The position numbers were made by a program, and so were the translations under genes. This document shows positions 808 to 31,185 of a DNA stretch of 64,000 nucleotides, in pieces. The notes beneath the pieces were generated by a model. It was not told the origin of the DNA, did no database searches, and saw only the letters and a list, made by a program, of their open reading frames with translations. Position 1 is the first letter of the stretch. Every line of letters starts with the position of its first letter. Source of the stretch: Macrostomum lignano (Eukaryota); assembly GCA_002269645.1 (NCBI GenBank), contig NIVC01001710.1:135071-199070 (forward strand). Reading direction: 5' to 3'.

Positions 808-5656
<4,849 letters not shown>

Positions 5657-12478: not shown

Positions 12479-13189
12479 TGCGACGCGAGATGACCAACTC
12501 GCAACTTGAGTCTTTATAAGATTGAGTCTAGACAATGCTCCGCGGTAGTTACTGCAGTGGGAGGGCAACATGCAACTGCTTACTAGTTTTACAGTGAAGT
12601 CTGGTCGAACTAGAGGAGTGCAGCAACCAAACAGCTTTCTCTTAGCTACCGACTCCGCATCCAGTCGCATTGAAGCCACAACTGCTGTACAGGTACCCCA
12701 TCGGGGGGGGGGGGAGGATCAGGCGAATCCCAACAACAGCTCTTAAAGCTATAACGCTTCTTCCCCTCTGCCCAAAAGCAGATGTATTTAGCAGCGGAGA
12801 AGTCGCGCAGACAGCCTATTGTTCTCAAACGGAATGGATCGATATAGTCGCCTGCTCTCATCTCTAACCGCTGTCTGTCTGCATCTCTCTTACCCTCTCG
12901 TCTATCTCTCATCCCCCGAAAATGGTTTTTTTCCTATGCGACACTTAATTAAATTGGAAATGGCATTTTTCATTTGGAATTTTTTTCATTACCCCGCGGT
13001 TGGTGCGGGACTAGCTTGTAGACTGATGGAGTAAGGAGTGGGTGCAGTACCGCTGTATGGGGCCAACTATGCAATTGGGAATTATATTGCCTAATCATGG
13101 GGATTTTAGTAATTATTTTATTATATGTTTAGCCAAAAAACATCTTCATTAGACTTCCATACGGAACCTTCTCATGGATAACTATAATC

Positions 13190-13748
13190 GACTTGGCAAC
13201 CTTCCAGTCTACAATCATCCAATCGGCAACCTTCCAGTCTACAATCATCCAATCGGCAACCTTCCAGTCTACAATCCTCAACTCGGCAACCTTCCAGTCT
13301 ATAGTCATCCAATCGGCAACCTTCCAGTCTCCAGTCCTCCACTCGGCAACCTTCCAGTCTATAGTCATCCAATCGGCAACCTTACAATCTACAATCATCC
13401 AATCGGCAACCTTCCAGTTTACAATCATCCAATCGGCAACCTTCCAGTCTACAATCATCCACTCAGCAACCTTCCAATCTACAATCATCCAATCGGCAAC
13501 CTTCCAGTCTACAATTATCCACTCGGCAACCTTCCACTCTACAATCATCCACTCGGCAACCTTCCAGTCTACAGTCATCAACTCGGCAACCTTCCAGTCT
13601 ACAATCATCCACTCGGCAACCTTCCACTCTACAATCATCCACTCGGCAACCTTCCAGTCTACAGTCATCAACTCGGCAACCTTCCAGTCTACAATCATCC
13701 AATTGGCAACCTTCCTGTCTACAGTCATCAACTCGGCAACCTTCCAGT
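13190..13748. repeat. 30-bp minisatellite (GGCAACCTTCCAGTCTACAATCATCCAATC) between the divergent CIMIP5-like and CLCA genes
   Basis: About 19 tandem units; the length is a multiple of 3, which explains the repetitive ORFs 13129-13870. Confidence 0.95.
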
Positions 13749-14228: not shown

Positions 14229-17200
14229 ATGAAGCTCATGAATTGTGAATTGATTTGGATTATTCTATCAGCGCTGCTGTGCTGCGGTCAGCTGGGATCA
14301 TCCGGCATTGAATTGGGATCGGACGGCCGATTCAGCGGTATTCGAGTGTCCATCGATTCTGGCGTACCTGTCAACAGGACTGCGTTAGGGAAGCTGAAGG
14401 TGAGTGAGGAATGCGATTATATGAAAATGACCGATTTAGATAATTAGGTAAATAGTATACGAAGATTAATTAGTCTGTCTAAGTTTTGTTACCGAGGTGA
14501 GGTGGGTACGTGAGATGGGCTATGTGAGGTTAGGCTAGGTTGGGTAGTGTATGTGTGATGGACTAATGGTGGTGGTGGGGTGTCCCGAAGTTGGGTGGTC
14601 TGAAGGTGCGGTGAGCTGAAGGTGCTGTGAGCTGAAGGTGCGGTGAGCTGAAGTTGGATGGTCTGAAGGTGCGGTGAGCTGAAGGTGCGGTGAGCTGAAG
14701 GTGCGGTGAGCTGAAGGTGCTGTGAGCTGAAGGTGCTGTGAGCTGAAGGTGCGGTGAGCTGAAGGTGCTGTGAGATGAAGGTGCGGTGAGCTGAAGGTGC
14801 GGTGAGCTGAAGGTGCTGTGAGATGAAGGTGCGGTGAGCTGAAGGTGCGGTGAGCTGAAGGTGCGGTGAGATGAAGGTGCGGTGGTCTGAAGGTGCGGTG
14901 AGCTGAAGGTGCTGTGAGCTGAAGGTGCGGTGAGCTGAAGGTGCTGTGAGCTGAAGGTGCGGTGAGCTGAAGGTGCGGTGAGCTGAAGGTGCGGTGAGCT
15001 GAAGGTGCGGTGAGCTGAAGTTGGATGGTCTGAAGGTGCGGTGAGCTGAAGGTGCGGTGAGCTGAAGGTGCGGTGAGCTGAAGGTGCTGTGAGCTGAAGG
15101 TGCGGTGAGCTGAAGGTGCGGTGAGCTGAAGGTGCAGTGAGCTGAAGGTGCGGTGAGCTGAAGGTGCAGTGAGCTGAAGGTGCGGTGAGCTGAAGGTGCG
15201 GTGAGCTGAAGGTGCGGTGAGCTGAAGGTGCGGTGAGCTGAAGTTGCTGTGAGCTGAAGGTGCGGTAAGCTGAAGTTGGATGGTCTGAAGGTGCAGTGAG
15301 CTGAAGGTGCGGTAAGCTGAAGTTGGATGGTCTGAAGGTGCTGTGAGCTGAAGGTGCAGTGAGCTGAAGGTGCGGTGAGCTGAAGGTGCGGTGAGCTGAA
15401 GGTGCGGTGAGCTGAAGGTGCTGTGAGCTGAAGGTGCGGTGAGCTGAAGGTGCGGTGAGCTGAAGGTGCAGTGAGCTGAAGGTGCGGTGAGCTGAAGGTG
15501 CAGTGAGCTGAAGGTGCGGTGAGCTGAAGGTGCGGTGAGCTGAAGGTGCGGTGAGCTGAAGGTGCGGTGAGCTGAAGTTGCTGTGAGCTGAAGGTGCGGT
15601 AAGCTGAAGTTGGATGGTCTGAAGGTGCTGTGAGCTGAAGGTGCAGTGAGCTGAAGGTGCAGTGAGCTGAAGGTGCAGTGAGCTGAAGGTGCAGTGAGCT
15701 GAAGGTGCGACGGGCTGTGCACTGAATAACAGAATCCCAATAAAAATTGTTCCAGGCAGCATTTCAGCTGGCTTCGGAACTCTTGGCCGTGGCCACGAAG
15801 CCCGTAATGAACGGCAGGAAGTCTTACGCGTTCGGCTCGGTGAAATTTCTGCTTCCGGACAGCTGGAGCAGCGCCGGATTGCCGAGTCGCTTTGGAACCA
15901 GTGGCAGGCAGGACGAGTTGGCGCACTTCCGGGTGCACAACGCACAGGATGGGAGCCAGGAGCCGTGGACGCCTCAGCCGTTGGGCTGCGGGAGGCCCGG
16001 CCTGTTCACCCTGCTGCCCTGGCCGGCTGTGACTGCGCTGGACAAGGAGACTCGTGAGTGGCGAGACTTGCTCTCGATCTCGTACACCTCAATCGAATCT
16101 CAGGACTCAGTCTCATCTTTGAGCTGTCAATCTCACCTTAGGACTCGATCTCACGTTAGGACTCGATCTCTCACTTTAAGAACTCAATCTCACCTTAGGA
16201 CTCGATCTCACCTTAGGACTCAATCTCACCTTAGGACTCGATCTCACCTTAGGACTCAATCTCACCTTAGGACTCGATCTCTCACCTTAAGGACTCCATC
16301 TCACCTTAGGACCCAGTCTTACCTTAGGACTCCAAGTCTCATCTTTGAGCTCTCAATCTCACCTTAGGACTCCATCGCACCGTAGGACTCAATCTCACCT
16401 TCGGACTCGATCTCCCCTCAGGACTCAATCTCACCTTAGGACTCGATCTCCCCTCAGGACTCAATCTCACCTTAGGACTCGATCTCACCTTAGGACTCAA
16501 TCTCACCTTAGGACTCGATCTCACCTTAGGACTCAATCTCACCTTAGGACTCGATCTCTCACCTTAAGGACTCCATCTCACCTTAGGACCCAGTCTTACC
16601 TTAGGACTCCAAGTCTCATCTTTGAGCTCTCAATCTCACCTTAGGACTCCATCGCACCGTAGGACTCAATCTCACCTTCGGACTCGATCTCCCCTCAGGA
16701 CTCAATCTCACCTTAGGACTCGATCTCACCTTGGGACTCAATTTCTGAGTGTCTGCCACAGCGAGCTACAGGGAAGCGGGTTTTCTTTTGTTTCAGTCAG
16801 CCGCGTCATCCTGCGCGAGTTCAGCCGGCTCCGCTGGGGCGCATTCGCCGAGTTCAACGGGCACGCCGGGCCGCACGGCTACGTGAGCGGCAACCGGCTT
16901 CACCCGGTGCGCTGCTCGGCCGCCCTGAGCGGCATATTCGCTCACAACGAGACCTACGGCAGGTGCAAAATCGACCGGGAGACGCTGACTTTGGAGCCTA
17001 ACTGTAGATTCTTTCTATACCCCGATCAGCCCACAGCCGAGGCGTCGCTTATGTACACCGTCTACATTGGCGCGGTGCGGCACTTCTGCGCCAGCGTCAG
17101 CCAAAGCGGCCTGGCGCACAACCCGGACGCGCCGAACCCGCACTACCGGCACTGCCCGGCCGGAGCCAGCGTGCGAGACGTGCTAGCGGGCCACGAAGAC

Positions 17201-20200
17201 TTCCGGTTCGGGCCGGAGATAACTGACCCCGACACGAAGATCAACTTTACGGAGGTGACGCCGATAATCGATCGTCGACTTGTCGTAGTCATGGACGTGT
17301 CGCGGAGCATGCGGGTAAAATTGCTGGGAAAAGGCCTTTTTAAGCACGCTCGTACTTATACATGAGGGTTGCAGGTTGCAGGCACCCTGGCCTAGCGCAA
17401 CTCCTTCGACGACACTGTCCCATTAAAATGTTGAGGCAATTCTGCCCATTCCGCTGGCTCCTGAGCACACACAAGCGCGCCAATGCTGTATGCGGCACAG
17501 CACTCATGCACACGCTAACACACTCTTTGTGCCTTGTGGGTTGGTCCTCATGGGTGTGAATCGGCCAATTTTAGACAATTGCTTTTGGCCATAACGTATT
17601 GCCATTTGAAAGTGGCAAAGGCTCTTCTATTCATCCAAATGCTACGGGCTGCACAATATTGCATAGAATTGTTCAGTCATTCTATCTTTAATGCGTACTT
17701 GCCGTACTTAGAAGTGAAATCGCTTACTAATTAGTAGAAATCAAGGATTTGAATTGAATACCTTGTCGTTCATGCAGAACTCGCGGCTCTTAAAACAAAG
17801 AAGAGCAGCTGAACCAGAAGAACCAGCAAAAGTGCCCAATCTACTAAAATGCGACTCACCAAAGATCTCCCAAGGTCTATCCAGCTGAGGATGAATGCTA
17901 CTGAATGGATCCTGGGAACCAGTACATCAAAATCAGACCCTCATATCGGTTACTTTCACTTCAGGGCCAACCGTTGGACAAGATGAAGCAGTCGATGCAG
18001 AACCTGTTGAGCCAGCAGCTGGCAGACGATGTGCAATGCGCCCTGATCTCATACTCCACGTCTGTGCACATCCTGGCACCGCTCAGGCAGCTCAACAGCT
18101 CGGAGGCTCGGCAAGCTCATTGGGGGCTGGTGAGGAGTCTGACTGCAAGCGGCGTCACCGCCACAGGCGATGCGATGGCAGCTGCCCTGGAGGTAAAAAC
18201 ATTACAATAGCATTGACGACGGGCCTGCAGCTCTTGCTGAGATTTACTCGTATGATCATGCGTGACTCGATTTTTCGATTTAATGCTAGACGAATTTCAT
18301 TTTTTATTTAAGTCCAGATTTTAAGGCGTATTTACGATCCGTACTCCGAAATGCACGAAATTTAAATCGATTTTATAAAGGCAGTTTCATCAACAACAAC
18401 AACAACACAAGATACTGTCAAAATGTTTCAAGTGAAAAAAGATAGAACGGTCACAAAATATGTGCCGCTGCGCTGTCGACTGAATGCAGCCAGCAAGCAG
18501 TCGACGAAATGCCGAGTGTGCACCTGTCCTCGCCGGTAGGGTGCCTGCAGCGTCAGCAACAGCATCCCCTGCACCGGCTGCTGGCAGTACAACTCTGCGA
18601 CCTGCTAGCTGGAGTCGCCGACGGTGCTTGGACGGACTAGACCGGCGGTACTTCACACTCGCAGCCAACCAAGTCTTATTGGCCTTCAAAACTTTCTCTC
18701 TAAGCCTCTTAGGATTCCTACTTAATTATATTGAAGCTGTGATCTCCCCTTCATCTCCCACCGCAGCTGCTCGGCTGCAACCTGACTCAGCCGTCCCGTT
18801 CCAACACCGGCCAAGTCCTGCTGATCACCGATGGCGAGGAGAACCACCAGCTGCGCTACAGCCTGAGCGACATCGTCCGGATCGCTGCTCAGACGTCCGT
18901 GACTGTGGACACTGTGGCCTTCGGCCGGCTGGCCGACACTCGTCTAGCCCGACTGTCCGCAACTACTGGAGGCACAGCGCACTTCTCCAGATTCATGGGC
19001 CCCGTTAACGATATGGTGGAGAGTCTCGGACAGGTGGCCGGCCGAATGGCCGACAGTCCGGATGCCTGGGTCAACGTGAGTACTAGCCGCCAGTAGCAGA
19101 GATAGCCAGTAGCCAGTGGCCAGTAGCCAGTAGCCAGTGGCCAGTATCCAGTAGCCAGTGGCCAGTATCCAGTAGCCAGTGGCCAGTAGCCAGTAGCCAG
19201 TGGCCAGTAGCCAGTAGCCAGTAGCCAGTGGCCAGTGGCCAGTAGCCAGTAGCCAGTAGCCAGTAGCCAGTAACCAGTAGCCAGTAGCCAGTAGCCAGTA
19301 GCCAGTAGCCAGTGGCCAGTAGCCAGTAGCCAGTAGCCAGTAGCCAGTGGCCAGTAACCAGTAGCCAGTAGCCATGCAGTGGCCAGTAACCAGTAGCCAG
19401 TAGCCATGCAGTGGCCAGTAACCAGTAGCCAGTAGCCAGTAGCCAGTAACCAGTAGCCAGTAGCCAGTGGCCAGTAGCCAGTAACCAGTAGCCAGTAGCC
19501 AGTAACCAGTAACCAGTAGCCAGTAGCCAGTCCCCAGTAGCCAGTAACCAGTAGCCAGTAGCCAGTGGCCAGTAGCAGCGATAGCCAGTGGCCAGTAGCT
19601 AGTAGCCAGTAGCCAGTAGCCAGTGGCCAGTAGCCAGTAGCCAGTAGCCAGTAGCCAGTAGCCAGTAGCCAGTGGCCAGTAGCCAGTAGCCAGTAGCCAG
19701 TAGCCAGTAGCCAGTAGCCAGTAGCCAGTAGCCAGTAGCCAGTAGCCAGTGGCCAGTCTGATTCCAGCCTTCACAATGCCCTTTCCACACAGCTGATTTC
19801 AAGCCAGCTCCGAAGCAGCCGCAACGCCACACCAGCGGCGCTCAGTTTTACAGTCGACTCTTCAGTGAGCGGCGCCGGTCTGCAGGCTTTCGTTATTGGC
19901 GCAGTCAGGCCGGCGCGGGTTCTGCTGCACCTGGCGCCAGTTGGCGACGCCCTCGACGCTGCAGTCGAGGAGGATCTGCAAGGCGATGTGCAACTGGGCA
20001 GCGGGCTGCTGCGGCTGAAAGGAAGAATTCGGGTGAGGAGCGACTCACCGTGCTGCTCAGCTCACAGGCTAGTCTAGCAATCCATTCTGTTCCTAAATCT
20101 AAAGATAGCCTTAGACTCTAGAATTACCTGTCAAACAAAAGAGACTCATGGGGGAATTTCTAAGACGTCAAGGTTCATGGAGGGAATTGCTGAGATGTCA

Positions 20201-23200
20201 AGGCTCATGAGGGAATCGATGAGATGCGAAGGCTCATGGGGAATTGCTGAGATGCCAAAGCTCATGAGGAATTGCTGAGATTTCAAGGCTCATGGGGGAA
20301 TCTATTGATTAGACTAGCAATCCATTATGCTGTTTATCAAGTAGTTTATAGAATTATGGTATTAAAAGTACAAGATAATTACTCTAAGTAGCTTAACAAG
20401 CTGTAAACGCTGTACATTATCACTGTTAATCTGGGCAGGTAACTCGAAATCGAGTGTATTAACCAGAATGATTTTGATAAGCTTTCTACTCTCTATCCAC
20501 CTATGTATGCACAACGCATTTCTGCCATAATTCAAGCCTTTAAATGCGGATAATTGCAGGAATTCCTATAGCAATGGCGTTGGAATGCAACAAAAATTAT
20601 TGCTTCTGCTAGACAGCCTGTCCCCTGTTCTTCCCAGCTTCACTTTTTATCATCATCGCAAGCATAAACTCGGACGGCCCAGGGCCGTTCCTTATCGAAT
20701 TTGCAAGAACAGCCATATTTGCTGGCAATTATAATTATTTACCGAAACTCCTGCAGTTTTCACATGAAAATCTTCTACCTGATAGCTATAGAAATTCTCG
20801 TTCAAGCGGTTGCTCGCCGTCTGCGGCCACACAAAAAGTGCATCGTGTCCTTACTAAATAGGCCTTCAGGTTCCTATAGCAACCATTTCCCATGACTTTG
20901 AAGTCCCAGCTCCTTGAAGAGTCAAGAGCATCTTTTAGCACGGGGCTCTGATCTCTGATTCTCTCTGGCGGTAAACCCATGCGGTCCCGTGAGAGTTGAC
21001 ATCAGGTCGGCTTTGGTCTTGGGTTTGGAGTCGCAATGCCCTCCTTAGTCCTCGGGTTCGATGCCTCAATAATTTTAGACTCGGAAACTGGCCCACACCG
21101 CCAAGGCACAGAGATTGTACACATGCGTGACGACGAGAAAGTGAGAGCCACTGCCCACCCTGTGTGAGCGTGTGCCTGCGTACTTTTTCAACTCAGCCTC
21201 CTTGCAAACTTTTCATGCTGACGGAGTGGAGCCCAAAAGCTTTATTTTCATGCCTAATCTCAGCTCAACCAGCTTGAACTCTTTTCCAACCGAACTCCAA
21301 CGCAGCCGGGCCGGTGGAAGCTGTACGTGTCTGTGTTGCCCACTGCCAGCCAATCGGAGGCCGCCACGTCACTCTACCATTCTGTCCTGATCTCGGGCCA
21401 GCCGGCCGCCTCTGATTGGCCGCCAGTCAGACTAACCGGCTTTCTCAGCCAATTGGAGGCGAGGCTCGACTCGAGCAGCCGGCATTCGGTGCACGCGTAC
21501 TTGCACCGCGGCTCCGCTGACGGATTCGTGCGTCCGGCCGAGCTCTGGGCCAGCGTCGAATCTGACGATGGCACCGTCGCCAACTTTCAGCTGTTCGATC
21601 ACGGAGCTGGTGAGTGAAATCTGTGCAGCCTGGAGATTTTGCAAAGATTATTGATTTTTAAACAGCTCTGAACGGGGTTTCGCCATAGACAAATAAGATT
21701 GGAGTAACTAAAAAGCCACCGCTGCCATTTTATTAAAACGGTAGCATTATTTGTACACGAAGACAATTTTCCTTTCACAGTCAATATCATCAGCCTTGCA
21801 GTCGTCTGTTAGCGCAAATCGTAAAGCCAAACTCTGTGCACCTGTTGTCAGGCGCTGACGTGTCACCCAACGATGGCATTTATTCTGCCTACCTGCCGCT
21901 GCACCGGATGTCCGGGCCGCCGCAGGACTACAGCGTCCGCCTGCGGAGCCTCAGCCCAGTTGACCGAGTCGCCTCCGCTGGCAAGTTCACCGTCACCGCG
22001 GTCGACTCAGTCGATTTGGCCCGTCTGCCGCCGGCTCGCGTCACCGACTTCGGCTGCACTGTCAATGCCACCAGCGGCCGGCTGCGGATGCGCTGGACCA
22101 CCGTTGGCGACCAGCTGGACAGTGGCGCTGGTAGGTTCTGTGTGGATTGCGCATGGCTGCTGATTGGGCATTGTGTGTCTCAGTAGTCTCAGTAGTCATT
22201 TGTCTTTTGTGTCTGCGTGCCCTTCGATTCTACCTTGAAATTCTACTCTTACTTTTACCTCTATTTGTGTTGAAAACTTTTTGCCGATGGTGTCTCCAGT
22301 GCTTGTGTTGTCGGGCTGTATTCCTTTTATGTCTTCAAGAATTTTCTTCTTGTGTCCTATTATGTGTCTTTACCATGTGTCTTCCGGTCTTCCAATTGTT
22401 TCTTTCTGTGTTCTCGAGTCTTCCAGTTGTGTCTTTAGTATGTGTCCTCCGGTCTTCCAATTTTTTCCAAGGACTACTTAAGTAGATATATACGTTACTT
22501 TAGTCGTCCTTGATTTTGTCTTTATGTATTCTCTCTTTAATTTGTCTTCTAGTCTTCCAATTGTGTCTTTAATTTGTGTCTTCCGGTCTTCCAATTGTGT
22601 CTTTAATTTGTGTCTTCCGGTCTTCCAATTGTGTCTTAAATGTGTCCTCCAGTCTTCCAATTGTGCCTTTTGTGTCCTGCAGTCTTCCAATTGTGTCTTA
22701 AATGTGTGTCCTCCAGTCTTCCAATTGTGTCTTGAATATGTGTCCTCCAGTCTTCCAATTGTGTCTTTAATTTGTGTTCTCCGGTCTTCCAATTGTGTCT
22801 TGAATATGTGTCCTCCAGTCTTCCAATTGTGTCTTGAATATGTGTCCTCCAGTCTTCCAATTGTGTCTTGAATATGTGTCCTCCAGTCTTCCAATTGTGT
22901 CTTGAATATGTGTCTGATTGTATCCGCCTGCCATCTCTCCAGCAAGCCGCTACTTGGTTCGGGCATCCGCCAACCGCAGCCTGCTGGAGCTCAACTTCGC
23001 ATCAGCAGACGACGTAGGGGCGGCCGCCCAGCTGCCCTCGGTGCCCTCCGGGCAGCCCATGACCCTGGAGGTTGCAGCTGCCGACGAGCTGCCCAGCTAC
23101 CCATCCGTCACATTCTACCTGGCAGTGCGGGCGAACAACTCAGCAGGTGTGCTCAGCCAGCTGTCCAATGTGGCTGCCGTGCAGCTGACCATGCCTGACA

Positions 23201-23949
23201 ATCTGGCTGAGATTGGCGTCGACGTTGGGGGCGAAAGCTCAACATCTAGCACAGAATCCAGCACGACATGTAGCACAGGATCCAGCACGGCATCTGCTCC
23301 AGAATCCAGCACGACATCTAGCACAGAATCCAGCACGGCATCTACTCCAGAATCCAGCACAGCATCTAGCACAGAATCCAGCACGGCATCTACTCCAGAA
23401 TCCAGCACGACATTTAGCACAGAATCCAGCACGGCATCTACTCCAGAATCCAGCACGACATCTAGCACAGAATCCAGCACAGCATCTAGCACAGAATCCA
23501 GCACGACATCTAGCTCAGAATCCAGCACAACATCTAGCACAGAATCCAGCACGACATCTCGCTCAGAATCCAGCACGACATCTAGCTCAGAATCCAGCAC
23601 GACATCTAGCACAGAATCCAGCACGACATCTCGCTCAGAATCCAGCACGACGTCTAGCTCAGAATCCAGCACGACGTCTAGCTCAGAATCCAGCACGGCA
23701 TCTCGCTCAGAATCCAGCACGACGTCTAGCTCAGAATCCAGCACGGCATCTACTCCAGAATCCAGCACGACATCAGGGCTGGATTCTAGTAAACACAGTC
23801 AGAGTTGGTGGTCATACATGGTAATTGTTTTGGCCCTAATTTTCGCACCTTCAATTGCAGCATTATTAGGGTTGTTCTTACTATTTGTTCACTCGAAACT
23901 CCCGAGCAGAAGCCTTCATCTACGCAATAAAAAAGTATATCCAATCTGA
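14229..23949 (+). CDS. clca: CLCA-family (calcium-activated chloride channel regulator-like) type I membrane protein, ~1117 aa; exons 14229-14399, 15756-16053, 16797-17314, 17965-18192, 18767-19075, 19793-20032, 21306-21609, 21852-22130, 22943-23949
   Basis: Domain order: signal peptide; CLCA N-terminal domain (PWTPQPLGCG, RLRWGAFAEF, FC...HNPDAPN...C); vWA with MIDAS (DVSRS, TATG, LLITDGEE); FTVDSSV; LFDHGAGADVSPNDGIYSAY; FnIII (LPPARVTDF...WTTVGDQLDSG); Ser/Thr stalk; C-terminal TM helix. All introns are GT-AG with consistent phase (3354 nt). Confidence 0.9.
14588..15708. repeat. 16-bp minisatellite (GTGAGCTGAAGGTGCG) in CLCA intron 1
   Basis: About 70 tandem units; explains the minus-strand ORFs 14535-15945. 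Confidence 0.95.
16120..16740. repeat. 18-bp minisatellite (AATCTCACCTTAGGACTC) with a 277-bp higher-order duplication, CLCA intron 2
   Basis: The block CCAAGTCTCATCTTTGAGCTCTCAATC recurs 277 bp apart. Confidence 0.9.
19084..19757. repeat. 7-bp tandem repeat (AGCCAGT)n in CLCA intron 5
   Basis: Long direct array; explains the LATGYW ORFs. Confidence 0.95.
20147..20300. repeat. Degenerate ~30-bp tandem repeat (GGCTCATGGGGAATTGCTGAGATGTCAA) in CLCA intron 6
   Basis: About 5 diverged units. Confidence 0.7.
21000..21180 (+). mobile_element. Degenerate tRNA-derived SINE-like copy (same family as 50600-50785)
   Basis: B-box-like GGTTCGATGCC, and shares GGCACAGAGA and CACCCTGTGTGAGCGTGTG with the 50.6-50.8 kb copy. 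Confidence 0.45.
22370..22915. repeat. ~34-bp minisatellite (GTCTTCCAATTGTGTCTTGAATATGTGTCCTCCA) in CLCA intron 8
   Basis: Direct tandem array. Confidence 0.9.
23240..23775 (+). repeat. Coding 24-bp tandem repeat giving a mucin-like (STESSTTS)n stalk in the last CLCA exon
   Basis: About 22 units of TCTAGCACAGAATCCAGCACGACA in frame, between the FnIII domain and the TM helix. Confidence 0.9.
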
Positions 23950-24240: not shown

Positions 24241-24439
24241 GTGAGGTGGGTGTCGTGAGGGTCGGAATGAGTCCCTTACCCCACAGGAAATTTTCAGCAA
24301 TGTACATTCAATACTGCATGCGCGGGGCGTGAGGTGGGTGTCGGGAGGTTGAGAATGTGTCCCTTACCCCACTGATAATTTTCAGCCATGTACATCCAAT
24401 ACTGTACACATGGGGCGTGAGGTGGGTTTCGAGGTGAGG
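24241..24439. repeat. 88-bp tandem repeat interrupted by the LTR retrotransposon (continues at 31186-31260)
   Basis: Units begin GTGAGGTGGG at 24241, 24329 and 24417; the third unit resumes after the 5' LTR. Confidence 0.85.
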
Positions 24440-24725
24440 TGTACTATAGAAATGAAAAGACCGATGGTCCGCCAATAACTATTTTGGAGCTGAGGCTCAA
24501 GCGAGACGCTAACAAAACGAAAAGCGTAAACCGTACACAGGGCTAATAAGCCCTCTCGATGATATATTTATTGCAGTCAGTCAGAATCAGCCAGCGTGGA
24601 GGGGGGTGGGTGAGATGGGCCTGGGCTAAATCAGCGTACATAGAAAATTGAATAATAAACACGTACATTAAATCACGCAGTGGAATTGGAAAGAAAATCA
24701 ATGCTACTAATCTACCTCCCAAACA
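24440..24725 (-). repeat. 3' LTR of the BEL/Pao element
   Basis: Identical to 30900-31185; preceded on the minus strand by the polypurine tract GGTGGGGGGG (24737-24728). Confidence 0.97.
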
Positions 24726-25452
24726 TACCCCCCACCTTGGCATAACAATGACAAAAACTATTCGAGGGATGAAACAATGAAAACGAATACGGTAATAGGA
24801 AAATATTCGAAAACGATGCGTGATACAAAATCGAACTCAAAAAGCAAAAAAACAACGTTGCATGAAACATTGATGGCGACATTGTGAATGGTAGAAAAAT
24901 AGAGCAAAAGGTGAAGATAAGTACGCAGATCGTAGATGACAATCGAAAATTTTGCAGAAGTACGTCAGCTATCATATAAAATTTCAAAATTGAACACGAA
25001 CGCAGACTTCCGCCACCAAACGCAACTGAAACAAAAACTGAAACAACAATTGTAAGCATTGGGCTATCAAAAGGTCGGAACTGGCGCATAAACTATGGTA
25101 CTTCTAAGCGCAGAAAATCAAGCAATATTAAGTAGAGCTCAAATAATGCAAACATCGCTCGTAAAAAACTCAAAAAACGCAAAAGACAAACTTGCCGACA
25201 AATTCACTAAACCGTAACGACTGCTATTCAGCAAAAATTCACGCAAGAAAATAAATAGCTAAATAATGAATGTTAATCGCGTTGAACACTGAAAGCGAAA
25301 ATTGGGTTAAGACGGCAAAAACAGGGTGATTCCTATTAGCATGAAAGGGAAAGAAGACTTTACGAACAATGCAACAAACAGGAAAATTGAACAACTCATC
25401 AGAAAAATTGCGAAACCTGACAAAGTCTAATTCTCTAGCAAAGGTTCGCAAA

Positions 25453-28400
25453 CTAACCTGCAGATATTGGACACAACTTTGTTATTGGTCTCGTCATTGT
25501 GCGATCACCGACTCTGATTGAGGCGACTCTCACGTGACCGTCCGAACCGCGCATGACCTCCAGCACGCGAGCCAGCGGCCAGTGACCCCGAGGCGAGTCC
25601 GGGCTCACCAGCAGCGCCACGTCTCCAGGTTGTAGGTCAGGCAGCTCGCGGCGCCACTTGCTCCGCGGTGCGAGTCCCGGCAGCCACTCGCGCAACCACC
25701 GGCGCCAGATCTGCGACACCAGCTGCTGGACGTGACGCCATCTTCTTGAAGGACTGCGGGCGATGGCAGCGTCGACCTCCGGTGCAAACTTCCCGCCGAC
25801 TTGCCCGATGAGGAAGTGATTCGGCGTCAGCGGCACATCATCACTCGGATGCGCCGTCTGGTACGTCAACGGCCTTGAATTCAGAAGTGCCTCCGCTCCA
25901 GCAAACGCGCTTAGCAGCTCCTCATCCGTGACGTCCGCCTCCTTCAGAATTGCCCAGATTGCCTTCTTCGCTGCTTTGATCATGATTTCGTGCACCCCAC
26001 CGAAGTGCGGCGCAGCGGGCGGGTTGAAATGCCATCGCAACTGCTGAGAAGCCGTTCGCTGTTGAAGCTTCTGGGTATCCAAGACGTCGACTAGTTCTCG
26101 AAGCTCGCGCGCCGCACCGACGAAGTTCGTGCCGTTGTCCGAGAACAGCTCGATCGGTTGGCCTCGTCGACTGATCATCCGCTGTAGAGTCCGTAGGAAG
26201 GAATCGGTATCCATGCCGAATGCCACTTCCAGATGTACAGCTCGCGTTGCCAAGCAGGTGAACAATGCCAGGTACCTTTTCTGCCGAGCCTTGCCACGGC
26301 CCTGCTTAGTGATGAATGGACCGGCAAAGTCGACAGCGACACGAGCGAAGGCACGAAGCGGCTCCTTGAATCGGCAAGCGGGCAAGGGGGCCATAATCTG
26401 GCTGGCTGGTCTGGCTTTCCGTCGGCGACATTCGGCGCACTTTGCTTCCCAAGACTTAATGGCTTCTCTGGCCGAGACGATCCAAAATCGGTTTGACAGT
26501 GCCACCAGAGTTTGGTTTGTGCCTAGATGTTGGACACTTTCGTGGTGATGCTTCACGATGAGCTCCGTCACGCGGTGTGATCGTGGCAGAATGATAGGAA
26601 ATCGAGTGCTAAACGGTAGCACATCGGCGAACTTTAGTCTCCCATCAGCGCGAAGCAGGTCGTTGACGTCGAGCTTCGGGTTCAAGTTAGAAATCACACT
26701 GCGTCCCGGCAACTGCTTTCCTGCTCGCAGACAAGCGATCTCTTCCGCAAACGTTTCTTGCTGGGCTCTCTGGATGATCTTCGATTCAGCTGCTTCAATC
26801 TCTGCTGGTGATAGCTCGCCAGTATCTCGGTGCTCCTTCATCAAACGGCAGTTGTTAGCGAACCTGGCCACCCAAGCGTGAACACGGACAGCTCTGATCC
26901 AGCTGGAGAAGCGCTCTGGCTCCAGTCGATGATTGCGCTCTAGCACATCGGTGACATACGTTCTCTGGCTCTCACCGGCCGGCGACTGATCCTCGCATCT
27001 GCGTCTCTCTTCCACCTGCTCAGGAACCTGCACTTTGTTCTTTGGCCAATTCTCTGCCTCTTCTAAGAGAAACTGAGGTCCATGCCACCACAACTGGCTA
27101 GCCGCCACTGCCTTGATCGATAGTCCTCGAGAGAGCAGATCTGCTGGATTCTTTTCCGTCGAAACATATCTCCACTGGTTCGGCTCTGTTGAAGCTTGGA
27201 TCTCGCCCACTCGAGAGGAGACAAACGGCTTGAACATTTTTCCTCGGCCACGAATCCAGTACAACACGTTTAAGCTGTCAGACCAAAAAACTGCGTCACG
27301 AAGCGGCACTTGCAATGACTGCGCGACTTTGCTTGCGAGTTGGACTCCCAGAACTGCTGCCATCAGCTCCAACCTCGGTGTACTCATGGTTGTGATTGGA
27401 GCTACTCGAGTCTTCGAGATGATAAGTCGAACGGAACGTTCACTGTCAGTTGCCGTTTCACTTCTCCAGTAGCATACAGCTCCGTAAGCTTTCTCGGATG
27501 CGTCAACGAACACGTGCACACTACCCGACAGGGAATTTTCTCCTTCAAGCGCCCTGGAAAGCCGAATCTCGCTTAAATGCTTCAGGTCAATGCACCAGGC
27601 GCTCACTTTTGCACTAAGTTCTGCATTCAGCGGTTCATCCCAATCAAGACCTGTCTGCCAAAGCTCCTGCATCAGAATCTTCGCCTGCACGACAAATGGA
27701 GAGATCAGTCCAAGTGGATCAAAGACGCTCGCTAGCTTCTTCAGCAGACCTCTTTTTGTGGTCACCTGACGCGACTCGTTTTCATCTTTAAAGGTAAATT
27801 CGTCCTGCTCACTCTGCCACGTGACACCCAGTGTCTTGGTGCTTGGTAGTTCTTTGCTGTCCAAGGTAACTTCGGCTGCACGGTCTTCAGGTGGGATTCT
27901 ATCGAGCACAGCTCTCGAGTTCGAGACCCACTTGCGCGCGTGCATGCCGGCGCGCCTCCAGAGCTCACTGAGTTGATCGTACAGCCTGCAGGCGGCTGCC
28001 TCGGTGGGCGCAGAGTCCAGGCTGTCATCCATATAGGTAGAGTGCAGTACTGTCTCGGCCGCCTCTGGAAGCTCACCTTTTGACTTTTCAGCATGGCAGC
28101 GGGTAACGAACTGTGCCAAGAACGGAGAGCTGGTGACGCCGAACACCACTCTGTTGAACTCGTAGACATCCGGCTGCTTTGAAGGATCGGCGTCCCGCCA
28201 AAGGAAACTGTGCAGCGGCCTGTCCTTCGGGTCCATCTCGATCTGGAGATACATTTCCGCTACGTCGCATGCGATCGCAATCGGGTGTCGGCGGAACCGA
28301 AGCAGCACGTCAACCAAATCCCTCTGCAGTTTGGGGCCCTGGAGGATCTGGTCGTTCAATCTGGCAGCCGATGCATCAAAGACTATTCGCACTTTTGTCG

Positions 28401-30813
28401 TAGCCTTGTCTGGCCGCAGCACTGGGAAGTGCGGCAGGAAACAGCGGCCTTCAGTCTCAGCTTGCGACACTTTTCGGATATAACCTTGCTGTTCATACTT
28501 TTCAAGGATCTCCTGATACTGCTTGCAGACGTTCATATCCTTAATCAGCCGCTGTTCGGTGTTCTTTAGTCGCTTCAAGGCCATTGAGAAAGTGCCTGCT
28601 GGAGCCAGCCGATCCTTTTTCCATGGAATCCCGATCTGGTAACGGCCCTTCGTGTACTTTAGCGACGACTTGGCTTGCTGGACGGCTCTCTCCTCATCGG
28701 CGGTCAGCGGACTTCGATTGGCACCTTCTGAGACGTTCTCGATCTCCCAAAACTGCCGCAGGATCTTAGCCACCTGACCAGATTCGGAATCGCAGCTGAA
28801 GAAAGTGGCAGCAAAATGGGCGTTCTGCATCTCAGAATTGTCCTGCTCTGTGCGACCGATGCACGTCCAACCCAGGGGAGTCAGGCGCGCCTTTGGCTCC
28901 AGCGGCTGTCCGACGATTTCTTTGAGAGACACGTGAAGATCCGGGTGATCAGCACCAATCAGCAAGTCCACTACTGCAGGCTCACACAGCTTCGGAAACG
29001 GCACATTTCTCAGATGAGGCCACTGCTGCGCTTCTTCGTGCCAGTCGACGCCTTTGAGGGACCCAGTCACGTGATCAGCGGTGAAGGCGACGATCATTGA
29101 GCTGGTCTGACCATCCAGACTTTCCAAGCTAAAGCAGACTGGGGCTGTCATGAAGGTCTCTGTTTGGCCATTGATGACTCCGACTTTCACCTTTTCGAGC
29201 GCTCCATGCACTCCAAGCGCTTCTGCTATCCCGATGTTGACGTAGCTCCTGGTACTGGCATCGTCGAGCAAGGCATTCACCTTCAGCTTCCGGGACCCGT
29301 TCCGTAGGACTACAGGTACCGTTCGTAGCGAGATTGCCGTTTCACCAGCCGACAGAAGCGTCACCGGTCCAGTCTTTCCTGAACTGGAAGCGGATTTAGC
29401 GTCCTTGGATGCAGTCTGCTTCGCTTCACCAGACTTGGCCAACACTTTTTCTGCATGAAGCAGGCGATGATGGAACTTTGTGCAGCTGCTGATGCCGCAC
29501 CGACGACCACGCCGACATTGGCTACCAAGATGTCCTTGGCCCAAGCACCGGAAACAACACTTCGAGCTCTGCGCCGCGTCCCAGCGTTTTTCCACCGGAA
29601 GCTCCTTGAACTCACTGCAGGACCACAGCTCGTGATCACCTTGACAAACAATGCAAATCTTTCGCTGTACCTTCTTGTCACTGTCCGTAGTAACGAAAGT
29701 CTTTGGTCGCTGCTCTCGCTTTTGACGCTCCTGCTGCATGGTGGCAACGCCCTGCACAATCTCTGACGCTTCAGTCTGAAACTCTGCTTCTTGCAGCACC
29801 CAAATTCTCAGATTTCTAACACTCTCCGGCTTCCGCTGCTCAAAGATCCACCTCCGGTAGCTGGCAACCATCTGCTCAGGCAACTTTTTCTGCAGCCTCA
29901 CATACAACATCCCATCTTGAAGCTCTGCCTCTTTACCCGCATCCTCAAGGTTAACGACAGCCACATCCAGTAGATTAGCAAAGCTTTTCAGATCCTTGGC
30001 GTTTCCATTTCGCACGATCGGGAAGCTGTCCAGCTCTTCCAAGTGCAGAGCAAGTTGCCTACGCTGTCCACCAAATTCTCTCTCTAATCTCTCTTTTGCA
30101 GCTTCATATGCCGCAGCAGAGTGTCCTAGATGTTCTATAACCTTCAAAGCTTCACCGCTGAGGTACTGCCTAAGCTGCAGCAACTTGAATTCTGGTGTTG
30201 CAGGGGCGCTGTCGATGCACGCAACAAAGGCTGCCTTCCAGTTTTCATACTTCTGCTTTTCTCCACTAAACGTTGGGATTTCAACACGCTTCAGCATCTT
30301 CCACAAATCCTTTGAAAGCTCCTTCGGGTTGGATCCTTTGCTGGACGCAGCACTGCCAGAAAGTTTGTGTAACTCACCAGCTGCTTCTTCTTGGTCACCC
30401 GCAGCGTTCTCACCGCTTGAGCTCGCGGCAGGAGGAGCTTCTTTGGCGCGCTGCAATCTCCGGTTTCTGGCGCTTTCGACGCGCTGCATGGCAGCTTGGT
30501 AGTCGCGCTCCGTCTCCTCCATTTCGTCTAGTAGGCGCTGTCGCCTCTCGTTGTCCTTGGCGTCGGCGTAGCCTTCATGCAGTTCTTCCTGGATGGCGCT
30601 GACCAGATCTTGCAGGTCTGACAGAGCGTCACAGGCAACTTGCACTTCGTCATCAGAGGCGTGCGTCTTTAACAGCCAAGACAGCTTGTTTTTGCAACGA
30701 GTGAACGCTGCTTTTTTTCGGGATTTCTCGAAGCGCAGCTTCTCTAAACGTAGGGCGCCGGCATCGTCTTGGGCTTCCTGCTGCTGCTGCTCATTGGCGT
30801 CGTCACTGTCCAT
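25453..30813 (-). CDS. BEL/Pao Gag-Pol polyprotein, 1786 aa from the first ATG (MDSDDANEQ)
   Basis: Gag with three zinc knuckles (CIVCQGDHELWSC, CFRCLGQGHLGSQC, CGISSCTKFHHRLLH), protease ALLDDAS, RT YMDD, RNase H FVDASEKAYGA, integrase HHCC plus DFAGP/SDNGTNF/HEIMIK. The order PR-RT-RH-INT is that of BEL/Pao. Confidence 0.97.
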   Translation of the reverse strand: MDSDDANEQQQQEAQDDAGALRLEKLRFEKSRKKAAFTRCKNKLSWLLKTHASDDEVQVACDALSDLQDLVSAIQEELHEGYADAKDNERRQRLLDEMEETERDYQAAMQRVESARNRRLQRAKEAPPAASSSGENAAGDQEEAAGELHKLSGSAASSKGSNPKELSKDLWKMLKRVEIPTFSGEKQKYENWKAAFVACIDSAPATPEFKLLQLRQYLSGEALKVIEHLGHSAAAYEAAKERLEREFGGQRRQLALHLEELDSFPIVRNGNAKDLKSFANLLDVAVVNLEDAGKEAELQDGMLYVRLQKKLPEQMVASYRRWIFEQRKPESVRNLRIWVLQEAEFQTEASEIVQGVATMQQERQKREQRPKTFVTTDSDKKVQRKICIVCQGDHELWSCSEFKELPVEKRWDAAQSSKCCFRCLGQGHLGSQCRRGRRCGISSCTKFHHRLLHAEKVLAKSGEAKQTASKDAKSASSSGKTGPVTLLSAGETAISLRTVPVVLRNGSRKLKVNALLDDASTRSYVNIGIAEALGVHGALEKVKVGVINGQTETFMTAPVCFSLESLDGQTSSMIVAFTADHVTGSLKGVDWHEEAQQWPHLRNVPFPKLCEPAVVDLLIGADHPDLHVSLKEIVGQPLEPKARLTPLGWTCIGRTEQDNSEMQNAHFAATFFSCDSESGQVAKILRQFWEIENVSEGANRSPLTADEERAVQQAKSSLKYTKGRYQIGIPWKKDRLAPAGTFSMALKRLKNTEQRLIKDMNVCKQYQEILEKYEQQGYIRKVSQAETEGRCFLPHFPVLRPDKATTKVRIVFDASAARLNDQILQGPKLQRDLVDVLLRFRRHPIAIACDVAEMYLQIEMDPKDRPLHSFLWRDADPSKQPDVYEFNRVVFGVTSSPFLAQFVTRCHAEKSKGELPEAAETVLHSTYMDDSLDSAPTEAAACRLYDQLSELWRRAGMHARKWVSNSRAVLDRIPPEDRAAEVTLDSKELPSTKTLGVTWQSEQDEFTFKDENESRQVTTKRGLLKKLASVFDPLGLISPFVVQAKILMQELWQTGLDWDEPLNAELSAKVSAWCIDLKHLSEIRLSRALEGENSLSGSVHVFVDASEKAYGAVCYWRSETATDSERSVRLIISKTRVAPITTMSTPRLELMAAVLGVQLASKVAQSLQVPLRDAVFWSDSLNVLYWIRGRGKMFKPFVSSRVGEIQASTEPNQWRYVSTEKNPADLLSRGLSIKAVAASQLWWHGPQFLLEEAENWPKNKVQVPEQVEERRRCEDQSPAGESQRTYVTDVLERNHRLEPERFSSWIRAVRVHAWVARFANNCRLMKEHRDTGELSPAEIEAAESKIIQRAQQETFAEEIACLRAGKQLPGRSVISNLNPKLDVNDLLRADGRLKFADVLPFSTRFPIILPRSHRVTELIVKHHHESVQHLGTNQTLVALSNRFWIVSAREAIKSWEAKCAECRRRKARPASQIMAPLPACRFKEPLRAFARVAVDFAGPFITKQGRGKARQKRYLALFTCLATRAVHLEVAFGMDTDSFLRTLQRMISRRGQPIELFSDNGTNFVGAARELRELVDVLDTQKLQQRTASQQLRWHFNPPAAPHFGGVHEIMIKAAKKAIWAILKEADVTDEELLSAFAGAEALLNSRPLTYQTAHPSDDVPLTPNHFLIGQVGGKFAPEVDAAIARSPSRRWRHVQQLVSQIWRRWLREWLPGLAPRSKWRRELPDLQPGDVALLVSPDSPRGHWPLARVLEVMRGSDGHVRVASIRVGDRTMTRPITKLCPISAG

Positions 30814-30878
30814 CCTGGTCCTTCGTTTCACAGTAGGGTTCTATTGCTTGCCACGTCAGTGGTAAGTTAGGCTTGTCC

Positions 30879-30899: not shown

Positions 30900-31185
30900 T
30901 GTACTATAGAAATGAAAAGACCGATGGTCCGCCAATAACTATTTTGGAGCTGAGGCTCAAGCGAGACGCTAACAAAACGAAAAGCGTAAACCGTACACAG
31001 GGCTAATAAGCCCTCTCGATGATATATTTATTGCAGTCAGTCAGAATCAGCCAGCGTGGAGGGGGGTGGGTGAGATGGGCCTGGGCTAAATCAGCGTACA
31101 TAGAAAATTGAATAATAAACACGTACATTAAATCACGCAGTGGAATTGGAAAGAAAATCAATGCTACTAATCTACCTCCCAAACA
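30900..31185 (-). repeat. 5' LTR of the BEL/Pao element
   Basis: Identical to 24440-24725; followed on the plus strand by the TSD TGAGG. Confidence 0.97.

What the first reader, a model, noticed from the sequence alone, without database searches (positions are those of the whole stretch)
16814..16828. CLCA pseudo-protease: the zinc motif HExxH is replaced by REFSR
Seen: spliced exon 3 reads LSRVILREFSRLRWGAFAEF. Known: mammalian CLCA1 has AFVHEWAHLRWGVFDEY, whose HExxH forms a zinc metalloprotease that self-cleaves the protein. Here both zinc-binding histidines are arginines while the Glu and the flanking LRWG are kept. The gene is otherwise intact (3354 nt, consistent phases, full MIDAS). 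Inference: a catalytically dead CLCA kept for a non-proteolytic role such as adhesion, mucus or channel binding.
Basis: partly seen in the sequence, partly recalled or inferred. Interest (0 to 1): 0.72.

Follow-up and report, generated by a model that had tools for sequence, protein, structure and literature searches.

The report
Flatworm CLCA with a dead protease site
This is an intact, selectively maintained flatworm (Macrostomum lignano) CLCA gene. It has lost all three catalytic zinc ligands and the loop that active CLCAs cut in themselves, so it is a real but not unprecedented "pseudo-protease", because CLCAs with substituted active sites were described in 2013.

Summary
Bases 16814-16828 (+) encode REFSR at the position where CLCAs carry HExxH. 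The 9-exon, 3354-nt gene translates exactly to GenBank PAA64837.1 (Macrostomum lignano BOX15_Mlig010877g1, "hypothetical protein").

- The third catalytic zinc ligand is also lost (human CLCA1 Asp167 is Ala174 here), and the neighbouring Tyr is Phe.
- The segment that carries the self-cleavage and inhibitory loop is 16 residues, against a median of 53 in active-type homologues.

Other parts are kept: the general-base Glu, the Gly-turn, the Met-turn, the four residues of the second (structural) zinc site, and a complete VWA MIDAS. AlphaFold models the fold confidently.

Four genomic copies carry the same motif. Against one of them dN/dS is 0.26, and exons diverge 0.9% against 2.3% for introns, so the gene is under purifying selection. 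The same genome keeps an intact paralogue (HEWGH...DE).

Novelty is limited. Lenart et al. 2013 reported that about 28% of CLCA_N domains lack HExxH, with His-to-Arg typical, and my sample shows at least 7 separately placed substituted groups. Verdict: a new member of a known kind. The loss of the loop and the invariant structural zinc site are modest additions.

The parts
14229..14399 (+). Exon 1: start codon, signal peptide (aa 1 to about 24) and the start of the CLCA_N domain
   Evidence: ATG plus a hydrophobic leader and a GT donor. Identical to PAA64837.1.
15756..16053 (+). Exon 2: N-terminal beta-sheet and backing-helix part of the metallohydrolase-like (CLCA_N) domain
   Evidence: AG/GT borders, phase 0 in and phase 1 out. 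Pfam CLCA_N covers aa 33-293.
16797..17314 (+). Exon 3: active-site helix, Cys-rich C-terminal subdomain of CLCA_N, and the start of VWA with the MIDAS DxSxS
   Evidence: Used as the query.
16814..16828 (+). REFSR (R163-E164-F165-S166-R167), in place of HExxH. Both His zinc ligands are Arg; the general-base Glu is kept.
16847..16855 (+). A174-E175-F176, in place of the D-E-Y of HExxHxxxGxxDEY. The third catalytic zinc ligand Asp is Ala and Tyr is Phe. The Glu (second-zinc ligand) is kept.
   Evidence: Alignment columns. Ligand assignment from the cryo-EM preprint.
16913..17119 (+). Retained structural elements: C196 (16913-15), Met-turn M242 (17051-53), C254 (17087-89) and H264 (17117-19). These correspond to human CLCA1 C187, M238, C250 and H255.
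   Evidence: These columns are invariant or nearly so: 101/101, 97/101, 100/101 and 100/101. Roles.
17294..17308 (+). VWA MIDAS motif D323-V-S325-R-S327. T394 is at 18157-18159 and D427 at 18830-18832.
17965..18192 (+). Exon 4 (VWA)
18767..19075 (+). Exon 5 (VWA C-terminal half)
19793..20032 (+). Exon 6 (beta-sheet-rich region)
21306..21609 (+). Exon 7 (beta-rich region). An in-frame alternative acceptor lies 42 nt upstream, at 21264.
21852..22130 (+). Exon 8: domain equivalent to the CLCA1 'inhibitory domain'
21929..21982 (+). YSVRLRSLSPVDRVASAG: a tight hairpin at the place where active CLCAs carry the autocleavage and inhibitory loop. It has 16 residues between the anchors, against a median of 53. 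It lies wholly inside one exon, so a missed exon cannot explain it.
   Evidence: AF2 strands 714-724 and 728-740.
22943..23949 (+). Exon 9: FnIII-like beta domain, Ser/Thr-rich mucin-like repeat (23233-23778; 24-bp unit x22), TM helix (23806-23889), short cytoplasmic tail and stop codon

Best explanation
The window carries Macrostomum lignano gene BOX15_Mlig010877g1.

SHOWN, the protein's layout: a type-I membrane protein of the CLCA family, made of a signal peptide, a CLCA_N metallohydrolase-like domain, a VWA domain with a complete MIDAS, beta-rich domains, a mucin-like Ser/Thr repeat stalk, a TM helix and a short tail.

SHOWN, from sequence and alignment:
- The catalytic zinc site is abolished at all three ligand positions. 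In human CLCA1 numbering, H156, H160 and D167 are R163, R167 and A174 here, and Y169 is F176.
- The general-base Glu, the Gly-turn, the Met-turn and the second (structural) zinc site (E175, C196, C254, H264) are retained.
- The 35-40-residue loop that in active CLCAs carries the self-cleavage site and plugs the cleft is missing.
- The gene is under purifying selection.
- The genome also holds an intact paralogue.

INFERRED:
- The protein cannot bind catalytic zinc or cleave itself. It therefore stays a single-chain, membrane-tethered pseudo-protease.
- The folded protease-like domain serves as a scaffold or binding surface. Ligand binding goes through the MIDAS of the VWA domain, on a mucin-like stalk at the cell or mucus surface.
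- It arose inside a flatworm-specific CLCA expansion, by subfunctionalisation of one duplicate.
For: - Motif and gene model. Identity to PAA64837.1.
- Pfam CLCA_N and VWA. MIDAS alignment to 6pyo.
- Zinc-ligand assignment (His156, His160, Asp167; Tyr169 nearby; Met238 turn; second site Cys187, Cys250, His255 with the motif Glu): cryo-EM preprint.
- Column counts over 101 homologues: H 93, E 90, H 88, D 83. The window protein reads R, E, R, A. E168, C187, C250 and H255 are invariant in 100-101 of 101, and the Met in 97 of 101.
- All 13 sequences that lost the second His also lost the Asp.
- Loop length is 16 against a median of 53. Loops of 25 or fewer occur in 6/15 substituted and 1/72 intact-motif proteins. 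Direct comparison with the intact M. lignano paralogue P0009.
- Selection: 13 synonymous and 10 non-synonymous differences, dN/dS 0.26, p=0.0016. Introns differ 2.3% with 9 indels; exons differ 0.86% with no indel.
- Four copies share the motif.
- AF2: ectodomain mostly pLDDT >90, pTM 0.80. MH domain alone: pLDDT 90.5, pTM 0.89.
- The NJ tree puts it in an M. lignano clade whose sister, P0009, has HEWGH...DE.
Against: - There is no biochemical or direct expression evidence. I could not map RNA-seq; the gene model matches a GenBank annotation but no reads were inspected.
- AlphaFold gives no metal positions and I had no coordinates. I therefore could not exclude that His179 and His183 (NGHAGPHG, just after the motif) approach the former zinc site.
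- The association between a short loop and a dead site is not corrected for phylogeny: four of the six short-loop cases are flatworm relatives.
- The dN/dS estimate rests on only 23 substitutions against one very close copy.
- Foldseek gave no significant structural match for the MH domain (best E=0.02). The fold assignment therefore rests on Pfam, on the family alignment and on the published CLCA1 structure.
Confidence: 0.8

Rival explanations
1. A decaying, functionless gene copy. On this reading the active-site loss is the first step of pseudogenisation in a highly duplicated genome, and the open frame survives only because the duplication is recent.
For: M. lignano carries many near-identical copies, four of this gene alone. 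Divergence between copies is low (dS about 0.02), so there has been little time to accumulate disabling mutations.
Against: - dN/dS is 0.26, significantly below 1, and exons have no indels against 9 indel events in 2.7 kb of intron.
- The dead motif predates the copy divergence. The closest relative on the tree outside the near-identical M. lignano copies, P0007, is only 39% identical over the exon-3 query region. It is also substituted (YEFGQ...PE) and is a complete 907-aa ORF on an intron-less 2973-nt contig assembled from a public sequencing run, which looks like a transcript.
- Every structural residue is still conserved: Cys, Met-turn, second zinc site and MIDAS.
Confidence: 0.06
2. Still a hydrolase. 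It would use a different metal-ligand set (for example His179 and His183 with Glu164 or Glu175), or a metal-independent mechanism, and act on other substrates rather than on itself.
For: The general-base Glu164 is retained here and in the sister protein P0007. Two His residues lie 3 and 7 positions after F176. The cleft would be unplugged because the inhibitory loop is absent.
Against: All three ligands defined structurally are replaced at once, by residues that do not bind zinc (Arg, Arg, Ala). No zincin is known to me that works with such a set (own knowledge). Glu retention is not general among substituted CLCAs, which show Q, A, L, T, F and Y at this position.
Confidence: 0.05
3. A decoy or partner of the active paralogue. 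The dead CLCA would bind the same ligands or oligomerise with the active M. lignano CLCA (Mlig024754), regulating it or being processed by it in trans.
For: An intact paralogue exists in the same genome (HEWGH...DE with a 53-residue loop). CLCA1 forms oligomers. Lenart et al. propose decoy or accessory roles for inactive zincins.
Against: The canonical cleavage loop is missing, so trans-cleavage at the usual site is unlikely. There are no co-expression or interaction data.
Confidence: 0.15
4. An artefact: a sequencing, assembly or gene-model error creates an apparent REFSR.
For: None found.
Against: The codons lie inside a 518-nt exon with clean AG/GT borders. The same 15 bases occur in an independent contig, and the same peptide occurs in four annotated copies.
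Confidence: 0.01

Closest known systems
Human CLCA1 (self-cleaving metzincin-like metallohydrolase and TMEM16A regulator; cryo-EM preprint 10.1101/2025.10.18.683246; VWA crystal structure 6pyo)
   Same: Same domain order: CLCA_N, VWA, beta-rich domains, FnIII-like domain. Also shared are the Gly-turn, the Met-turn, the second zinc-site residues, the Cys pattern and a complete MIDAS.
   Different: The catalytic ligands H156, H160 and D167 are R, R and A here, and Y169 is F. The autocleavage and inhibitory loop is absent. The window protein has a mucin-like stalk and a TM anchor, whereas CLCA1 is secreted.
CLCA_N proteins with substituted active sites (Lenart, Dudkiewicz, Grynberg, Pawlowski 2013, PLoS One 8:e62272)
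   Same: This is exactly the phenomenon described there. Only 72% of CLCA_N domains have HExxH, first-His-to-Arg is named as frequent in CLCA_N, and the loss arose independently several times.
   Different: That paper had no flatworm sequences (0 mentions). In the passages I read, it does not mention the loss of the cleavage loop or the invariance of the second zinc site, whose structure was solved only in 2025.
Diadema (sea urchin) CLCA1-like XP_072166784.1 (P0134, REWGR...FPE) and the ENA fragment P0060 (REWAR...FPE)
   Same: The same RExxR pattern, with the Asp also lost and the Glu kept.
   Different: They come from a different phylum, so this looks like convergence rather than orthology. 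Neither is in the tree, because both are partial sequences. For the same reason the loop could not be checked.
M. lignano paralogues: Mlig024754 (P0009, HEWGH...MDE), A0A1I8F7L8 (P0006, HEFAH...FNE), A0A1I8G1G6 (P0132, LYFSQ) and A0A1I8GWG2 (P0126, LFFSQ)
   Same: Same species, same clade on the NJ tree and same architecture.
   Different: P0009 has the full motif and a 53-residue loop. P0006 keeps HExxH but has Asn for the Asp and a 23-residue loop. P0126 and P0132 are dead with other residues and loops of 16-17 residues.
Non-catalytic ADAM family members (own knowledge; also cited in Lenart 2013)
   Same: Membrane-anchored metzincin-fold ectodomains that lost HExxH and act as adhesion or receptor proteins.
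   Different: A different metzincin family with different accessory domains (disintegrin and Cys-rich instead of VWA). The resemblance is an analogy in how they work, not family membership.

Membership tests
CLCA family (Pfam CLCA_N PF08434 + VWA architecture) | CLCA_N domain above the Pfam gathering score | tested here: met
   89.5 bits against a cut-off of 25.6, E=3.3e-25, aa 33-293.
CLCA family (Pfam CLCA_N PF08434 + VWA architecture) | VWA domain with a complete MIDAS (DxSxS, T, D) directly after CLCA_N | tested here: met
   PF00092 E=2e-16, aa 318-478. D323, S325, S327, T394 and D427 align with the human CLCA1 VWA domain 6pyo.
CLCA family (Pfam CLCA_N PF08434 + VWA architecture) | Second (structural) zinc site and Met-turn (CLCA1 E168, C187, C250, H255; M238) | tested here: met
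   E175, C196, C254, H264 and M242 are present. The columns are 97-100% conserved in 101 homologues. This is by alignment only; no metal was modelled.
CLCA family (Pfam CLCA_N PF08434 + VWA architecture) | C-terminal beta-rich and FnIII-like domains, with a TM anchor in most paralogues | tested here: met
   AF2 gives confident beta domains at aa 507-863. The TM helix at aa 1071-1098 is read from the sequence. There was no Pfam FnIII hit.
Active CLCA / metzincin-type zinc metalloprotease | Zinc-binding motif HExxHxxxGxxD(EY) with three metal ligands | tested here: not met
   The motif reads R-E-x-x-R-x-x-x-G-x-x-A-E-F. Ligand identities.
Active CLCA / metzincin-type zinc metalloprotease | Internal autocleavage and inhibitory loop in the domain that follows the beta-rich region | tested here: not met
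   16 residues between the anchors, against a median of 53 in 72 intact-motif homologues. The region lies within one exon.
Active CLCA / metzincin-type zinc metalloprotease | Metzincin fold of the N-terminal domain | tested here: inconclusive
   The model is confident (pLDDT 90.5). Foldseek against the PDB gave no significant hit (best E=0.02). The weak hits are mostly metzincins: BF3526 peptidase, ADAM10, venom metalloproteinases and MMPs. No full-length CLCA structure turned up in either search of the PDB copies.
Active CLCA / metzincin-type zinc metalloprotease | Proteolytic activity or self-cleavage | not testable with these tools
   Needs recombinant protein.
Pseudoenzyme (inactive homologue kept by selection) | Catalytic residues lost, fold-defining residues kept, purifying selection | tested here: met

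The most novel reading that the evidence does not exclude
The Arg-Glu-x-x-Arg site may not be mere debris. It could be a convergently evolved, metal-free, positively charged pocket. RExxR with loss of the Asp recurs in a sea urchin CLCA and in an unassigned ENA fragment. Together with deletion of the autoinhibitory loop, this would turn the former substrate cleft of a glycoprotein-directed metzincin into a permanently open binding site for anionic ligands, such as sulfated or sialylated mucin glycans. The protein would then be a membrane-tethered lectin-like mucus receptor. As a corollary, the loss of the loop together with the site would be a general rule for how CLCAs become pseudoenzymes.
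Probability: 0.12. Interest if true: 0.55.

Novelty: new member of a known kind. Interest (0 to 1): 0.3.

Why it matters
It adds a clean, well-supported flatworm example to the known set of CLCA pseudo-proteases, in a laboratory model (M. lignano) where RNAi and transgenesis are available. An active paralogue in the same genome offers a natural comparison.

Two side results could be useful to people working on CLCA structure and function:
- In 101 homologues the second zinc site is invariant whether or not the catalytic site survives. This argues that it is structural.
- Loss of the catalytic ligands tends to go together with loss of the Asp ligand (13 of 13 cases) and, in several lineages, with loss of the autocleavage loop.

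None of this changes how the family is understood. It is an incremental finding.

Tried and rejected
- My first gene model used the exon-7 acceptor at 21264 and gave 3396 nt.
- The word-indexed homologue search with the 894-aa ectodomain returned only 5 proteins. Repeating it with an 18-sequence full-length alignment returned 6; I suspect, but did not check, that low-complexity words from the mucin-like tails filled the candidate list. That second search was wasted. The exhaustive HMMER search with exon 3 gave the usable set: 192 hits, of which 150 were listed.
I used the exon-3 translation instead.
- Foldseek with the full-length model was dominated by VWA-domain hits and said nothing about the protease-like domain. 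A separate model of the N-terminal domain gave only non-significant metzincin hits.
- A tblastn of the protein against the window found no second CLCA gene.
- Literature searches for the gene identifiers and for Macrostomum plus CLCA found nothing specific. One 2012 catalogue lists CLCA1, CLCA2 and CLCA4 homologues in the M. lignano transcriptome.
- I considered a sequencing error, a missed exon as the cause of the short loop, and pseudogenisation. I rejected all three for the reasons given under the rival explanations.
- I ran no further search on looking for orthologues in other Macrostomum species. One search had already found no protein between 25% and 97% identity.
Full report
**1. Observation**

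The bases at 16814-16828 on the + strand are CGC GAG TTC AGC CGG, which encode REFSR. They lie in a 518-nt exon (16797-17314) that follows a polypyrimidine tract and an AG.

I rebuilt the whole gene as nine + strand exons between 14229 and 23949, all with GT-AG borders and compatible phases. My first choice of acceptor for exon 7 (21264) gave 3396 nt. With the acceptor at 21306 the CDS is 3354 nt (1117 aa) and the translation is identical to GenBank PAA64837.1, [quoted passage not shown]. So the window is flatworm DNA and the gene is already annotated, though not functionally.

**2. What the protein is**

Pfam gives CLCA_N (E=3e-25, aa 33-293) followed by VWA (E=2e-16, aa 318-478). The only solved structure found by sequence is the human CLCA1 VWA domain, 6pyo. 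In that alignment and in the family alignments the MIDAS residues D323, S325, S327, T394 and D427 are all present.

The C-terminal exon encodes a beta domain, a 24-bp x22 Ser/Thr-rich repeat that looks like a mucin stalk, a hydrophobic helix (aa 1071-1098) and a short tail. There is a typical signal peptide. The protein is therefore a type-I membrane CLCA on a mucin-like stalk.

AlphaFold2, with a 101-sequence alignment and the 97%-identical copy P0001 as target, models the ectodomain confidently: most 10-residue blocks have pLDDT >90 and pTM is 0.80. The repeat is disordered. The N-terminal domain alone gives pLDDT 90.5 and pTM 0.89.

**3. The active site in detail**

The 2025 cryo-EM preprint on human CLCA1 (10.1101/2025.10.18.683246) assigns the following:
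- The catalytic zinc is bound by His156, His160 and Asp167.
- Glu157 is the general base, and Tyr169 lies next to the metal.
- Met238 forms the Met-turn.
- A second zinc site is formed by Cys187, Cys250 and His255 together with the Glu of the extended motif HExxHxxxGxxDEY.

I ran an exhaustive HMMER search with the exon-3 translation against 1.84 billion representatives. It gave 192 hits at E<=1e-3. I aligned the 101 near-full-length ones. The column counts are:

| Human CLCA1 position | Conserved residue, count of 101 | Window protein |
|---|---|---|
| H156 | H, 93 | R163 |
| E157 | E, 90 | E164 |
| H160 | H, 88 | R167 |
| G164 | G, 101 | G171 |
| D167 | D, 83 | A174 |
| E168 | E, 101 | E175 |
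| Y169 | Y, 78 | F176 |
| C187 | C, 101 | C196 |
| M238 | M, 97 | M242 |
| C250 | C, 100 | C254 |
| H255 | H, 100 | H264 |

Everything that looks structural is kept. Across the sample, every one of the 13 sequences that lost the second His also lost the Asp. The second zinc site never varies, whatever the state of the catalytic site.

**4. The self-cleavage loop**

In CLCA1 the autocleavage site sits on a beta6-beta7 extension of the "inhibitory domain" that occludes the active site. In the alignment, this extension lies between two conserved anchors: the Tyr of GRY and the Gly of the following strand.
- The 72 non-redundant homologues with an intact H-E-H-D set have a median of 53 residues between the anchors (10th percentile 48).
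- The window protein has 16 (YSVRLRSLSPVDRVASAG). AF2 models this as a tight hairpin, with strands at 714-724 and 728-740.
- The stretch lies entirely within exon 8 (21929-21982), so a missed exon cannot explain it.
- The intact M. lignano paralogue P0009 has 53 residues at this place.

Short loops (25 residues or fewer) occur in 6 of 15 proteins with a non-canonical site against 1 of 72 with a canonical one (Fisher p=6e-5). This test is not corrected for phylogeny, and four of the six are flatworm relatives, so it counts as suggestive only. For this protein the conclusion stands: it lacks both the catalytic centre and its own intramolecular substrate.

**5. Real and maintained**

Four annotated copies (Mlig010877g1 and Mlig010312g1, g2, g3) carry REFSRLRWGAFAEF. 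I fetched the locus of Mlig010312g2 (L001, contig NIVC01002797.1). It is collinear with the window, introns included.
- Over 2673 aligned coding bases there are 13 synonymous and 10 non-synonymous differences and no indel. dS is 0.019, dN is 0.005 and dN/dS is 0.26 (binomial p=0.0016).
- Four non-repetitive introns differ by 2.3% and carry 9 indel events.
- The number of substitutions is small, but both contrasts point to purifying selection.
- The closest relative on the tree outside these near-identical M. lignano copies (P0007, 39% identical over the exon-3 query region) is also substituted (YEFGQ...PE) and also has a 16-residue loop. It sits as a complete 907-aa ORF on an intron-less 2973-nt contig assembled from a public sequencing run. 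That looks like a transcript.

**6. Evolutionary setting**

A neighbour-joining tree on 861 well-occupied columns, without bootstrap, puts all M. lignano CLCAs in one clade:
- The intact Mlig024754 group (HEWGH...DE) forms one branch of the clade.
- The other branch holds P0006 (HEFAH but Asn for the Asp, loop of 23), then the window protein with P0007, and a pair with LYFSQ and LFFSQ.

This looks like a lineage-specific expansion in which duplicates progressively lost the loop, the Asp and the His residues.

Elsewhere, substituted sites occur in several other animal groups:
- holostean fish (bowfin and gar)
- the hemichordate Saccoglossus
- a pearl oyster
- the sea squirt Ciona
- an acoel
- a sea urchin (REWGR...FPE, the same RExxR pattern)

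On the tree alone the substituted sequences fall into at least seven separately placed groups.

**7. Comparison with what is known**

Lenart et al. [quoted passage not shown] They report the following:
- HExxH is present in 72% of CLCA_N domains.
- First-His-to-Arg is frequent in CLCA_N, and second-His-to-Lys also occurs.
- Loss happened about five independent times.
- They suggest decoy or accessory roles, by analogy with non-catalytic ADAMs.

That paper mentions no flatworms. I found no paper on this gene or on Macrostomum CLCAs beyond a 2012 catalogue entry.

The window protein is therefore a member of the CLCA family by domain content. It fails the tests for an active metzincin-type protease (see the membership table). 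It works like other membrane-anchored pseudo-metalloproteases.

Foldseek could not independently confirm the metzincin fold. The best E-value was 0.02 and the weak hits were mostly metzincins. No full-length CLCA structure turned up in either search of the PDB copies.

**8. Mechanism proposed**

Shown: loss of the three zinc ligands, loss of the loop, retention of the scaffold, the MIDAS and the membrane anchor, and purifying selection.

Inferred:
- There is no catalytic zinc and no self-cleavage, so the protein remains a single-chain surface protein.
- The VWA MIDAS, and possibly the now unplugged Arg-lined cleft, bind partners.
- The mucin-like stalk projects the head away from the membrane.
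- Which partner it binds (mucus components, a TMEM16-type channel, matrix or another CLCA) is unknown.

The rivals are neutral decay, residual hydrolase activity with other ligands, decoy for the active paralogue, and artefact. They are weighed in their own sections.

**9. Verdict**

It is a new member of a known kind, of low to moderate interest (0.3).

Noticed in passing
window 25453-30831 (-), with repeated flanks near 24300-25100 and 30900-31500: A single uninterrupted 1792-aa ORF with the look of an LTR-retroelement polyprotein: gag-like zinc knuckle, protease, reverse transcriptase (YMDD), RNase H and integrase. Short ORFs on either side encode the same peptide, which suggests two LTRs. 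It lies about 1.5 kb downstream of the CLCA gene, on the opposite strand. I did not extract, assemble or analyse it further, by instruction.
   Followed up: no
window 13187-13748, 14600-15709, 16127-16742, 19089-19757, 22534-22914: Long minisatellites sit upstream of the CLCA gene and in introns 1, 2, 5 and 8. Their units are 30, 16, 18, 7 and 34 bp, with 11 to 96 copies. Copy numbers differ between the window and the paralogous locus L001. They create long spurious ORFs on both strands.
   Followed up: partly
window 35537-36430 (+) and 51056-52087 (+): Two ORF pieces hit the Pfam ASC family (amiloride-sensitive sodium channel, DEG/ENaC). One matches profile positions 1-236 (E=1e-27) and the other positions 351-439 (E=1e-8). 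They are probably exons of one gene, or of two, downstream of the CLCA gene.
   Followed up: no
window 60020-60781 (-): An ORF with a partial Forkhead domain (PF00250, E=1.6e-9). It is probably an exon of a Fox transcription factor gene.
   Followed up: no
window 3208-4386 (-): A 392-aa ORF matches the Cornifin/SPRR profile (E=4e-19, three stretches). This may be a Pro/Gln-rich repeat protein, or just a translated tandem repeat.
   Followed up: no
window 21264 versus 21306 (exon 7 acceptors): Two in-frame AG acceptors lie 42 nt apart. The upstream one would add 14 residues (LNQLELFSNRTPTQ). The GenBank models use the downstream one. Alternative splicing is possible but was not tested.
   Followed up: partly
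alignment A2 (101 CLCA homologues); window codons 16847-16849, 16913-17119: There is a family-wide pattern. All 13 sequences lacking the second His of HExxH also lack the Asp ligand. The four residues of the second zinc site are invariant whatever the state of the catalytic site.
   Followed up: yes
L001 (NIVC01002797.1), locus end: The paralogous copy Mlig010312g2 (P0001, 1067 aa) runs into the end of its contig. Its odd C-terminus (…SWCHTW, no TM helix) is therefore probably a truncation artefact rather than a secreted isoform.
   Followed up: partly
L002 (Logan SRR30276804 contig, 2973 nt): A contig that looks like a transcript, from a run whose organism I could not identify, encodes the nearest non-lignano relative (907 aa). 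It has YEFGQ...PE and the same short hairpin. The dead lineage is therefore older than the M. lignano copies.
   Followed up: partly
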